Source of the DNA: Dimorphilus gyrociliatus
Taxonomy: Eukaryota; Animalia; Annelida
Length of the DNA stretch: 64,000 bases
Direction of reading: 5' to 3'
NCBI GenBank assembly: GCA_904063045.1
Contig: CAJFCJ010000004.1
Location: 1,233,713 to 1,297,712, forward strand
Below, piece after piece: positions 60,953 through 63,671 of the stretch. How positions within the stretch are numbered: the stretch's first letter is position 1; every line of letters starts with the position of its first letter. Position numbers and translations under genes: made by a program. The notes below the pieces were generated by a model. It did no database searches, was not told the origin of the DNA, and saw nothing but the letters and a program-made list of their open reading frames with translations.

Positions 60953-63671
60953 TTAGTCTTGAGTTTCTTTGCTCGACTTGCTTGAAATAGGTGTGGCTGT
61001 TGAACTTCTGCTCAGCTGGAAAGCCCATTTCTTGATAATCTTCTCAGCTGCAGCTAGTGTTTCATCTTTCTGTATTATTTTTACAGTACCATTAATAGTT
61101 TTTTGAATTATTGACTCAATAGAATGTATGCGAAACCTTAATAAAACAGAATCTTATCATATTCTCAACCAGTACTTTATGATCTTGGCTATAGAATGCG
61201 CTTGGTGGTATTCCGGATAGTTTCTTATAAGACAATAGAATAAGTAATAAGAAAAGTGCGAACGTTCATTGGATAATTTATCTTATTAAAAATACCTTAT
61301 TTGCTATCATCCATTTAACAAACTGATAATCTTTCGGTTCGTTTGAATCTCCCAAGTTAATTTCGGGGCTAGCATTCATTAAACCAGAATAATCGGCAAT
61401 CATAAAATACCCTCCGTCAGGTATAATGGGCTTCATCCCAACTTCTTGTAAACATTTCGCTAAGAAATCTCGCTTCGGCTGCAATTCCCTGGCTAATTTT
61501 AATAAATAACAATCTTTACAGCCGCTTCCTAACTTTGGAATTTCTCTTTCAACCGCCATAGCAATAGCCTCCTACAGATTTAATGACGAAGAATTATTAA
61601 ATTTTATAATGAATTATTTGCATAAAAATAAGAACTTGTAGAGGAGTAGGGCAAGTATATGAACAATTTTGATGTAACACCGAGCAAGCCTTAACTAAAT
61701 GCGGTGGTCCGATAGTCCAACCCAATTTCCAGCCAGTTACCGAGAAAGCTTTTCCAGCGCTACTAAATGTCAAAGTTTGGTCGTACATACCAGGAAGATT
61801 TGCTGTTTTGAATATGAGAAAATGGAAATAAAATATCTTAAAAATAAATCGAAGTCTTCTGTTTTTCATTCGGAACTAAATCGATCTTTCTTTTATTTCA
61901 TTGAGAAAAGTAAGAAAGTAAAAGTCATTTAAAACATTAAGCAGCGGGATTAACTCTATAATATACAAAATCTTTATATTTTTCGTATTTCTTAAGAAAT
62001 ATCGATATTTATACCTTCCAATCTTATATAATAAAATTTATTGAATTCTCGCCCTCTCATTTCTCATCTACAGTCTTCTTAATATAAATTATCTTACGCT
62101 ATACAGAGACCTGCACCGGTGTAGCAGCTGCGCAAACAGAATTCTGATGAACAGTCCTAAGCGCGTGTATAAAATAATCAGGCCCTATAACCCATCCTAC
62201 TCTCCACCCGGTTATCATCCATGTTTTCCCAGCACTTCCCATTGTTAAAGTTCTTTTCCACATATCAGGTAGAGAGGCTGATAAATGATTTCGTTTAAAA
62301 CGTTTACCAACTATCTCAGAGAATATCTTTTAGTCAATAGATATTTCTCAATTTTTGTTTTTAATACAAATTCATATTTGTTGCTTTTTTTATTTACAAA
62401 AAATATAGCTTACCTATCTTTATGTGTTTTTTATCATCGTATATAAGCCATTCATAAACTTCATCGCTAAAAACGATAGTGTTATATTTTTTGCATAAAT
62501 CAGCTATCATTTCACATTCTTCCATGGAATAAACCTACAATGTTTATCAAAAGAAAAACTAATTAAAAGATAATAAAGTTTTTTTAAACTAGTTATATTA
62601 TATCTGTATAAATTCCCGATAGAAAGAACGTACTTTGCCCAAAGGATTGTTTGGATTATTAAAGAATATGGCTTTAGTTTTATGCGAGAATTTCGAAGAC
62701 AATTCCTCGTAGTCTAGACAGAACTCCGAACTTTGAAAAGATGCCCTCTCAGCATCTTCTGGTTTTTCAATCTGTATTTTTTGTTGTTAGATAAAGGTTC
62801 TCTATTGAAATTAGAGTCTTTAGTAAATATTATAGTACAAACCCTTCTTAGAGGGACAAAAACTGGTACACCGCCAGCAACTCGAACCATAGGCTCGTAG
62901 CAATCAAAAAAAGGTTCAATAATAATTACTTCATCTCCAGGATTAATAAGTCCTTGAACAGCACAGAATAAACCTCCATAGGCACCAACTGATATGAGAA
63001 TTTCATTCATGGGGTCAATAGGGTGATTCATAAGTGGAGAGTACAAATCGGCTAAAGCTTTGACCAATCTTGGATGTCCGTATCCTTTGAAAGTATTACA
63101 GGCTAGTATAATTCCTTACATTGAAATTTTTGTCAAATTATAATCACCTCTAGTATATTGGTTTAAAAAAGGATTATCACTCATTACAGCTTCTGCAAGA
63201 GCTTTTTTAACATATTCAGGCGCATGAAAATCTGGGAATCCCTAGATTTTATAAAAGAAAAATAATCAATATACTGTATTTTATTGAGTAGAAAAATATT
63301 CTCTTTATTTGCTTACTTGTCCTAAATTCAAAGCTTTTTCCTTAACAACTAAATTTCCGAATTCAACCCTATATTAATTTTAAATTTCATAACATATTAA
63401 CAATTTTGAACAGATTTAACAAATATAAACAATAAAAAAAGTTTATATTAAAGTCTTTTTAACAAAAACTAGCTAAAGAGACGCTTATATTAACTATTTA
63501 CTTGTCCTAAATTCAAAGCTTTGTACTGGGTACACAACTTTCCAAATTCAGCCCTTTAATAATTTTATTGAATATATTGGTTTTTGTTTTGCTTCGTAAA
63601 ATTGAAATTCTTACTCACCAAACATTTTGATCTGTCCCTTGTAATCTATCAGCCAATCCGTGGTGTGCCAT
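60953..63671 (-). CDS. KYAT: Kynurenine-oxoglutarate transaminase / glutamine transaminase (KAT I/III, CCBL family, PLP fold type I); 10 exons per mRNA, about 448 aa, with two mutually exclusive exon pairs
   Basis: Exons 63671-63619; 63553-63502 or 63368-63317; 63241-63148; 63084-62843; 62771-62634; 62534-62414; 62277-62111 or 61802-61636; 61571-61296; 61223-61137; 61069-60953. Total 1347 nt with one exon of each pair. Motifs LNLGQGFPD, NQYTRGYGHPRL, IIIEPFFDCY, NNPNNPLGK, SDEVYEW, SAGK, GGYF, IRFCFIK. Confidence 0.95.
61636..61802 (-). CDS. KYAT: KYAT alternative exon 7b (167 nt): ANLPGMYDQTLTFSSAGKAFSVTGWKLGWTIGPPHLVKACSVLHQNCSYTCPTPLQ
   Basis: CAAAACAG| acceptor, CAA|GTTCTT donor, same length and phases as 7a, homologous sequence with the PLP lysine. 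Confidence 0.9.
62111..62277 (-). CDS. KYAT: KYAT alternative exon 7a (167 nt): ASLPDMWKRTLTMGSAGKTWMITGWRVGWVIGPDYFIHALRTVHQNSVCAAATPVQ
   Basis: TTTATCAG| acceptor, CAG|GTCTCT donor, phase 1 to phase 0, open frame containing the PLP lysine (SAGK). Not in the ORF track. Confidence 0.85.
63317..63368 (-). CDS. KYAT: KYAT alternative exon 2b (52 nt): (W)VEFGNLVVKEKALNLGQ
   Basis: AATATAG| acceptor, CAA|GTAAGC donor, same length and phases as 2a; shares the identical 3' sequence AAAGCTTTGAATTTAGGACAA. Confidence 0.85.
63502..63553 (-). CDS. KYAT: KYAT alternative exon 2a (52 nt): (W)AEFGKLCTQYKALNLGQ
   Basis: ATTAAAG| acceptor, CAA|GTAAAT donor, phase 2 to phase 0. Confidence 0.85.

What the first reader, a model, noticed from the sequence alone, without database searches (positions are those of the whole stretch)
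60953..63671. Possible combinatorial or coordinated isoform system: up to four subunits, and mixed dimers, from one aminotransferase locus
Inference from the two exon pairs: independent choice gives 2a7a, 2a7b, 2b7a and 2b7b subunits, while coupled choice would give two paralog-like enzymes sharing one scaffold. Established: these enzymes are homodimers whose active sites take residues from both subunits, so heterodimers would add further hybrid active sites. Both variable exons cover substrate-contacting segments, and the scaffold exons are single-copy.
Basis: inference. Interest (0 to 1): 0.75.

Follow-up and report, generated by a model that had tools for sequence, protein, structure and literature searches.

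The report
Twin swappable exons in worm aminotransferase
One kynurenine aminotransferase gene of the tiny marine worm Dimorphilus gyrociliatus has two intact alternative copies of each of two active-site exons, so it can probably make two to four enzyme versions, but no RNA data could be reached to show which versions are made.

Summary
Window 60953-63671 (minus strand) is a 10-exon KAT I/III-type aminotransferase gene of Dimorphilus gyrociliatus (public model DgyrCDS2916). It has two tandem exon pairs: 2a/2b (52 nt each) and 7a/7b (167 nt each). Each pair has the same length and phase, AG/GT borders, and a length that is not a multiple of 3. Using both copies or neither copy runs into a stop within about 20 codons.

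Exon 7 carries the PLP lysine and the pocket residues that each subunit lends to its partner (hKAT1 278/279). These are Tyr-Thr in 7b (KAT3-like) and Cys-Ala in 7a. Exon 2 is the sliding helix of the N-terminal arm.

7a is old (dS saturated, dN/dS 0.22) yet keeps 23 of 28 family-conserved residues, which neutral decay cannot explain. The public model uses 2b+7b; 2a and 7a are unannotated. Owenia, Capitella and the neighbouring paralog DgyrCDS2920 have single copies.

The combinatorial, coupled-choice and heterodimer ideas remain untested. First-stage readers of this scan had already noted both exon pairs on this same stretch. I file this as a new member of a known kind (mutually exclusive exons), with an interesting enzymological angle.

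The parts
63619..63671 (-). Exon 1 (ATG, 17 codons + 2 nt), donor TTTG|GTGAGT
   Evidence: identical to residues 1-18 of DgyrCDS2916
63502..63553 (-). Exon 2a, 52 nt, unannotated (AEFGKLCTQYKALNLGQ). Equivalent to hKAT1 residues 19-35, the sliding helix of the N-terminal arm
   Evidence: 13/16 aa identical to the single Owenia exon. Not in the public model
63317..63368 (-). Exon 2b, 52 nt (VEFGNLVVKEKALNLGQ), the copy used in the public model
63148..63241 (-). Exon 3 (constitutive)
62843..63084 (-). Exon 4 (constitutive)
   Evidence: (PF00155)
62634..62771 (-). Exon 5 (constitutive)
62414..62534 (-). Exon 6 (constitutive), ends in phase 1
62111..62277 (-). Exon 7a, 167 nt, unannotated. Has the SAGK PLP lysine, Arg at the hKAT1 Lys255 position, and Cys-Ala at hKAT1 278/279. 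Weak donor GTCTCT
61636..61802 (-). Exon 7b, 167 nt, used in the public model. Has the SAGK lysine and Tyr-Thr at 278/279 (KAT3-like). Weak donor GTTCTT, conserved in a relative
61296..61571 (-). Exon 8 (constitutive)
61137..61223 (-). Exon 9, missing from the public model, which reads on into intron 8
60953..61069 (-). Exon 10 with stop codon, missing from the public model

Best explanation
This is a KAT I/III-type (CCBL/KYAT) PLP aminotransferase gene of Dimorphilus gyrociliatus with two clusters of mutually exclusive exons, each made by tandem exon duplication.

Shown:
- Each pre-mRNA can keep the reading frame only by using exactly one exon 2 and exactly one exon 7.
- Double inclusion or double skipping shifts the frame into early stops.

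Inferred:
- Out-of-frame products are removed by nonsense-mediated decay.
- The choice at each cluster is set by weak splice sites and trans-acting factors, not by a strong docking/selector RNA structure.
- Swapping exon 7 replaces the PLP-lysine strand and the pocket residues each subunit lends to its partner: Tyr-Thr, KAT3-like, in 7b and small Cys-Ala in 7a. Swapping exon 2 replaces the sliding helix that closes the active site. The isoforms should therefore differ in substrate preference.

My guess on phasing:
- The two choices are made largely independently, so three or four subunit types exist (about 45%).
- The choices are strictly coupled, giving two isoforms (about 30%).
- One isoform dominates everywhere (about 25%).
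For: Identity of the gene:
- DgyrCDS2916 (P0172) matches the window exons exactly.
- The best solved relatives are mouse KAT3 (1.6e-136), Aedes KAT and human KAT1. PF00155 hits fall on the exons.

Mutually-exclusive-exon signature:
- Exon lengths are equal, 52/52 and 167/167 nt, and neither is a multiple of 3. Phases match and borders are AG/GT.
- All four wrong combinations reach a stop within about 20 codons.

Selection on 7a:
- 7a vs 7b gives dN 0.50, dS 2.28 and dN/dS 0.22. 15 of 25 identical-residue codons differ synonymously.
- 7a keeps 23/28 columns that are at least 90% conserved in 178 KATs, against 9/27 variable columns.
- In a neutral-decay simulation, P(no stop and at least 23/28 kept) was 0.009 or less, even if only a quarter of the divergence were neutral.

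Other support:
- 7b is under strong constraint in a relative (dN/dS 0.07, dS 0.65). Its odd donor and downstream intron are conserved: 72% identity against 31-56% for the other introns.
- 2a is 81% identical to the single Owenia exon, so it is not a decayed copy.
- Functional mapping comes from PMC6400995 and PMC4926479.
- The introns around the alternative exons (133, 136 and 308 nt) are two to five times the genome's 66-bp median (PMC7854359), in a compacted genome.
Against: - No RNA evidence of any kind exists for 2a or 7a. The only public model is 2b+7b.
- No other D. gyrociliatus-like full-length protein exists among 5.8 billion clusters.
- 7a sits on a long branch and carries residues never seen in 178 family members at hKAT1 positions 249 and 250. 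This could mean relaxed constraint.
- 2a/2b has dN/dS 0.71 over only 17 codons, which does not separate selection from neutrality.
- Orthologs of 2a, 2b and 7a in the related species could not be retrieved.
- Owenia and Capitella have no duplicates, so there is no deep conservation to lean on.
- Neither cluster folds better than shuffled sequence (z +0.36 and -0.11), so the mechanism of exon choice is unknown.
Confidence: 0.62

Rival explanations
1. Only the annotated 2b+7b mRNA is made. On this view 2a and 7a are silent relics of tandem exon duplications that have not yet been deleted.
For: - The public model uses 2b and 7b only, and no other isoform is in the databases.
- 7a is on a long branch with family-unique residues.
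- The duplications are absent from Owenia, Capitella and the paralog.
Against: - 7a and 7b are saturated at synonymous sites. Yet 7a is open, has exactly 167 nt, keeps AG/GT borders, keeps the PLP lysine, and keeps 23/28 family-conserved residues. Simulated neutral decay gives P of 0.009 or less.
- 2a resembles the ancestral annelid exon more than 2b does.
- A compacting genome with 66-bp median introns would be expected to lose about 600 nt of dead sequence (PMC7854359).
Confidence: 0.15
2. The choices are strictly coupled. Only two mRNAs exist, 2b+7b and 2a+7a, which behave like two paralogous enzymes sharing one scaffold.
For: - The one known model pairs 2b with 7b.
- Both segments line the same substrate pocket (PMC4926479, PMC6400995), so matched pairs could be co-adapted.
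- An earlier unchecked note of this scan (s1-080266) reports matched-pair use of two exon clusters in another gene of this genome.
Against: - The two duplications seem to differ in age (dS 0.37 against 2.28).
- By family comparison 2a and 7b are the ancestral-like copies, while 2b and 7a are the derived ones. The known 2b+7b mRNA therefore already mixes types.
- The pocket takes exon 2 from one subunit and the residue 278/279 loop from the other. Linking the two exons on one mRNA would therefore not fix pocket composition unless dimers also sort.
- No long-range RNA structure signal was found.
Confidence: 0.3
3. The apparent exon pairs are an assembly artefact, caused by collapsed or duplicated haplotypes.
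For: None beyond the tandem arrangement.
Against: - The copies are only 56% (exon 7) and 76% (exon 2) identical in DNA, far below allelic divergence.
- The window matches the public assembly's protein exactly.
- 7b with its flanks is present in independent contigs of a related species.
Confidence: 0.01

Closest known systems
Vertebrate KAT I (KYAT1) and KAT III (KYAT3) paralogs
   Same: - The fold and catalytic residues are the same.
- The Tyr-versus-smaller residue difference at the pocket position given by the other subunit (hKAT1 Phe278, mKAT3 Tyr312) is what separates KAT1 from KAT3 in pocket polarity (PMC4926479).
- 7b scores best against KAT3 and 7a against KAT1.
   Different: - Here the difference is encoded by alternative exons of one gene, not by two genes.
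- The KAT1-likeness of 7a is not significant (AU test p 0.39).
- 7a has Cys-Ala, not Phe-His.
Mutually exclusive exon pairs in enzyme genes, such as mammalian ATE1 exons 7a/7b (PMC7797038) and PKM exons 9/10 (own knowledge)
   Same: Tandem homologous exons of equal length swap a functional segment of one enzyme.
   Different: - ATE1 uses conserved competing RNA structures, and none is detectable here.
- This gene has two clusters, and the swapped parts build one active site shared between two subunits.
Genes with several mutually exclusive exon clusters: Drosophila Dscam1 and Mhc (own knowledge); C. elegans has 29 clusters in 27 genes (PMC4165533)
   Same: There is more than one cluster per gene. 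Frame or nonsense-mediated-decay surveillance acts as a safeguard where the exon length is not a multiple of 3.
   Different: Those cases are proven by RNA. Here the use of one copy of each pair (2a and 7a) and the phasing are unknown.
Neighbouring paralog DgyrCDS2920 in the same genome
   Same: It belongs to the same KAT subfamily and is 59% identical. Its exon 7 groups with 7b (96/87 support).
   Different: It has a single exon 2 and a single exon 7. The lineage has therefore diversified KAT both by gene duplication and by exon duplication.

Membership tests
Mutually exclusive exon cluster made by tandem exon duplication | Adjacent exons that are homologous to each other and to the same segment of the protein family | tested here: met
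   7a/7b give E 3e-20. 2a/2b form a 70-nt direct repeat at 80% identity. Both members of each pair align to the same family columns.
Mutually exclusive exon cluster made by tandem exon duplication | Same length, same phase, and intact AG/GT borders on every copy | tested here: met
   Lengths are 52/52 and 167/167 nt. Phases and splice dinucleotides were read directly.
Mutually exclusive exon cluster made by tandem exon duplication | A mechanism that forbids including both copies or neither | tested here: met
   52 and 167 are not multiples of 3. All four wrong combinations hit stops within about 20 codons. Steric hindrance is excluded, because the introns between copies are 133 and 308 nt. No RNA-structure signal was found.
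Mutually exclusive exon cluster made by tandem exon duplication | Transcripts that contain exactly one copy, with each copy seen in some transcripts | not testable with these tools
Only the 2b+7b model exists.
Mutually exclusive exon cluster made by tandem exon duplication | Purifying selection on every copy | tested here: inconclusive
   - Met for 7a and 7b.
- Met for 7b between species.
- Exon 2 is too short to test (dN/dS 0.71 over 17 codons).
- Orthologs of 2a, 2b and 7a in the relative were not retrievable.
KAT I/III (CCBL/KYAT) subfamily of fold-type I PLP aminotransferases | Aminotran_1_2 domain and closest similarity to characterised KAT I/III enzymes | tested here: met
   PF00155 hits fall on the exons. 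P0172 against PDB gives mouse KAT3 1.6e-136, Aedes KAT 1.7e-130 and human KAT1 1.4e-117.
KAT I/III (CCBL/KYAT) subfamily of fold-type I PLP aminotransferases | Schiff-base lysine in the SAGK motif, in both exon 7 versions | tested here: met
   Both 7a and 7b align to hKAT1 Ser244 and Lys247.
KAT I/III (CCBL/KYAT) subfamily of fold-type I PLP aminotransferases | Homodimer with active sites shared between the subunits | not testable with these tools
   This is known for solved KATs (PMC6400995, PMC4926479). It is assumed here by homology.
Coordinated (coupled) distant alternative exons | Non-random association of the two choices on single mRNA molecules | not testable with these tools
   No reads or long cDNAs were available. 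The single model pairs 2b with 7b.

The most novel reading that the evidence does not exclude
Both clusters are chosen independently and the subunits dimerise freely. Each active site takes exon 2 and the lysine side of exon 7 from one subunit and the residue 278/279 loop of exon 7 from the other. One compact gene would then yield four subunits, ten dimers and up to eight different active-site compositions. That would be a combinatorial enzyme whose substrate range is tuned by splicing.
Probability: 0.15. Interest if true: 0.75.

Novelty: new member of a known kind. Interest (0 to 1): 0.5.

Why it matters
If both alternative exons are used, this would be a clear case of alternative splicing doing the job that gene duplication does in vertebrates (KAT1 versus KAT3). 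It changes the very pocket residue that separates those isozymes. It would do so in an enzyme whose active site is built from two subunits, so splicing could also create hybrid sites. A full-text search of about 8.4 million papers and preprints found none that mentions mutually exclusive exons, exon duplication and aminotransferases together. The finding also corrects the public gene model, which lacks 2a, 7a and the last two exons. It adds to a pattern noted elsewhere in this scan: this miniature genome keeps many swappable exon pairs.

Tried and rejected
- Transcript-derived isoforms: a search with the public protein found nothing above 62% identity other than the protein itself.
- Short fragments: I tried to reach them with an alignment headed by a short exon. 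This failed because the length filter follows the profile length.
- Exact look-up of four window ORFs: none is in the collection. P0172 is not on record for contig look-up, and neither is the Tubulanus protein.
- Related species: its contigs (L001, L002) begin about 145 nt upstream of 7b and do not reach 7a.
- Origin of 7a: a 55-column tree leaves it unresolved. AU tests reject neither 7a+7b nor 7a+KAT1, so I dropped the idea that 7a is an ancient KAT1-type exon.
- Docking/selector RNA structures: the inverted repeats found are AT-rich and no better than chance. Folding gave z-scores of +0.36 and -0.11.
- Isoforms of other species (Mercenaria, Betta, Oculina): they differ at the N-terminus or by exon skipping, not by exon swapping.
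- Six tandem exon-6-like copies in Owenia: they carry in-frame stops, so they are a minisatellite and not an exon cluster.
No isoform structures were predicted.

Full report
**What is there**

The stretch 60953-63671 holds one gene on the minus strand. Translating the three minus-strand frames and reading the splice borders gives ten exon positions. The coordinates are listed under parts, and the coding length is 1347 nt with one copy from each pair. Two positions are occupied twice. Exon 2 exists as 2a (63553-63502) and 2b (63368-63317), each 52 nt. Exon 7 exists as 7a (62277-62111) and 7b (61802-61636), each 167 nt. All four follow an AG, precede a GT, are open, and enter and leave in the same phase as their twin.

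7a and 7b align without gaps at 25/55 residues, E 3e-20. 2a and 2b share 11/17 residues and lie in a 70-nt direct repeat of 80% identity.

**Organism and gene**

Earlier notes of this scan named the genome as the annelid Dimorphilus gyrociliatus. I checked this. A profile search returned DgyrCDS2916 (P0172, 386 aa, assembly GCA_904063045.1), whose sequence matches the window's exons exactly.

That public model consists of exons 1, 2b, 3-6, 7b and 8, and then reads into intron 8. It lacks exons 9 and 10, which are conserved in a related species and across the family. Exons 2a and 7a are not annotated. According to the genome paper, models were built with EvidenceModeler, with transcript assemblies weighted tenfold (PMC7854359). 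The 2b+7b combination therefore probably reflects a real mRNA, but this is not proof.

P0172 is closest to mouse KAT3 (1.6e-136), Aedes KAT and human KAT1 among solved structures. The exons hit Pfam PF00155.

**Why the pairs must be mutually exclusive**

52 and 167 are not multiples of three. I read single exons in the frames they would have after a wrong choice:
- 2b read after 2a stops at its second codon.
- Exon 3 read directly after exon 1 stops after 18 codons.
- 7b read after 7a stops after 10 codons.
- Exon 8 read directly after exon 6 stops after 6 codons.

Only one-of-each keeps the frame. The introns between the copies (133 and 308 nt) are long enough to be spliced, so steric exclusion does not apply. 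Neither cluster folds better than shuffled sequence (z +0.36 and -0.11), and the inverted repeats present are AT-rich and unremarkable. I therefore infer that frame surveillance is the safeguard. I also infer that weak splice sites plus protein factors make the choice. Both exon 7 copies have poor donors, GTCTCT and GTTCTT.

**Are the unannotated copies alive?**

For 7a the answer is very probably yes.
- 7a and 7b differ at 73 of 165 coding positions, with dS 2.28 (saturated), dN 0.50 and dN/dS 0.22. 15 of the 25 codons that encode the same residue differ synonymously.
- Against 178 distinct KAT sequences, 7a keeps 23 of the 28 columns that are at least 90% conserved, but matches only 9 of 27 variable columns. 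7b keeps 25/28 and matches 12/27.
- In a simulation that mutates 7b with intron base composition, no draw was both open and kept at least 23/28 when all or half of the divergence was neutral. Only 0.9% of draws did so when a quarter was neutral.
- 7a keeps Ser244 and Lys247 (hKAT1 numbering), and has Arg at the hKAT1 Lys255 position.

A coding exon kept by selection next to a twin that is known to be used can only be used by alternative splicing.

For 2a the case is softer. The exon is short and dN/dS to 2b is 0.71. However, 2a is 13/16 identical to the single exon of Owenia, against 11/17 for 2b. 2a is therefore the ancestral-looking copy and not a decayed one. The last 25 nt of 2a and 2b, plus GTAA, are identical. 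This points to a younger duplication, to gene conversion, or to nucleotide-level constraint.

**Comparative data**

A close relative is represented by Logan contigs from SRR23372231 and SRR23372232 (L001, L002; about 77% DNA identity). It has an intact 7b with dN/dS 0.07 and dS 0.65. Its intron after 7b is 72% identical, against 31% and 56% for the next two introns. The odd donor GTTCTTATTTTT is unchanged, as is often seen next to regulated exons. The contigs stop about 145 nt upstream of 7b, so the relative's 7a, 2a and 2b could not be seen.

Owenia fusiformis and Capitella teleta have one exon 2 and one exon 7. D. gyrociliatus has a second KAT gene, DgyrCDS2920, on the same contig. It is 59% identical and also has single copies.

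In a tree of the exon 7 segment, 7b joins its ortholog (99/88) and then the paralog (96/87). 7a is a long unresolved branch. AU tests reject neither 7a+7b nor 7a+vertebrate KAT1. The slightly better PDB score of 7a to KAT1 and of 7b to KAT3 is therefore not evidence of an ancient split. The duplications arose somewhere on the dinophilid line.

**What the swaps change**

KATs are homodimers with the two active sites at the subunit interface. The N-terminal arm, hKAT1 residues 14-34, slides over the site and places Trp18 on the ligand (PMC6400995). The pocket is formed by Tyr101, Phe125 and Trp18 of one subunit and by Tyr63, Phe278 and His279 of the other. Phe278 of KAT1 corresponds to Tyr312 of KAT3, which makes the KAT3 pocket more polar (PMC4926479).

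By the alignments, exon 2 is residues 19-35, the sliding helix that begins right after the Trp. Exon 7 is residues 231-285. At positions 278/279, 7b has Tyr-Thr (KAT3-like) and 7a has Cys-Ala, which are small residues. 7a also has Trp-Met where the family has Phe-Ser, just after the lysine. These residues were never seen in the 178 sequences. Different substrate preference between the exon 7 isoforms is thus a reasonable inference, but it is not shown.

**The combinatorial claim**

The arithmetic is sound: four subunits and ten possible dimers. One site combines exon 2 and the lysine part of exon 7 from one chain with the residue 278/279 loop of the other chain. Up to eight site compositions are therefore conceivable. 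Even strictly coupled splicing would give hybrid sites if heterodimers form.

Nothing here tests phasing or dimer mixing. Two indirect hints speak mildly against strict coupling:
- The pairs appear to differ in age (dS 0.37 against 2.28).
- The one known mRNA joins a derived exon 2 (2b) with the ancestral-like exon 7 (7b).

An unchecked note of this scan reports matched-pair use in another two-cluster gene of this genome (s1-080266). That speaks the other way.

**Limits**

- One was lost to a wrong assumption about the length filter.
The only full-length sequence used is the database's own P0172.

**Verdict**

- The exon pairs are real.
- 7a is almost certainly a functional alternative exon, and 2a probably is.
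- The gene most likely makes at least two enzyme forms with different active sites, and possibly four.
- The combinatorial and heterodimer readings are legitimate hypotheses without data.
- The kind of system, mutually exclusive exons from tandem duplication, is well known (PMC6071210, PMC4165533, PMC7797038).
- An aminotransferase that swaps its catalytic-lysine exon was not found in the searched literature.

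Noticed in passing
window 60953-61295 (exons 9 and 10; intron 8 at 61224-61295): The public model DgyrCDS2916 ends by reading into intron 8 (tail VFLIR, then a stop). It omits the last two exons. These exons are conserved in the related species (79% DNA identity each) and across the family. The model is truncated by about 62 residues.
   Followed up: partly
L003:10001-11831 (CAJFCJ010000004.1:1310912-1312742): A second KAT gene, DgyrCDS2920 (416 aa, 59% identical), lies a few genes away on the same contig. It has a single exon 2 and a single exon 7. 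The related species also has it (fragment P0002).
   Followed up: partly
L004:7759-8488 (Owenia fusiformis KAT locus): There are six tandem copies, about 120 nt apart, of the 3' end of the exon that precedes exon 7, together with the start of its intron. Five of the six carry in-frame stops. This is a minisatellite born from an exon-intron border, not an exon cluster.
   Followed up: yes
window 61572-61635 (intron after 7b) and L001: This 64-nt intron is 72% identical to the related species, and its first 12 nt (GTTCTTATTTTT) are unchanged. Introns 8 and 9 are only 31% and 56% identical. It may be a splicing-control element.
   Followed up: partly
window 63498-63526 and 63313-63341: The last 25 nt of exons 2a and 2b, plus the first 4 intron bases, are identical, while the 5' halves have diverged. 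This suggests partial gene conversion or a nucleotide-level constraint at the donor side.
   Followed up: no
L001:138-341 (minus strand): The collection's gene call on the strand opposite to exon 7b reads through several standard stop codons when translated with table 11. The call is probably spurious or was made with another genetic code.
   Followed up: no
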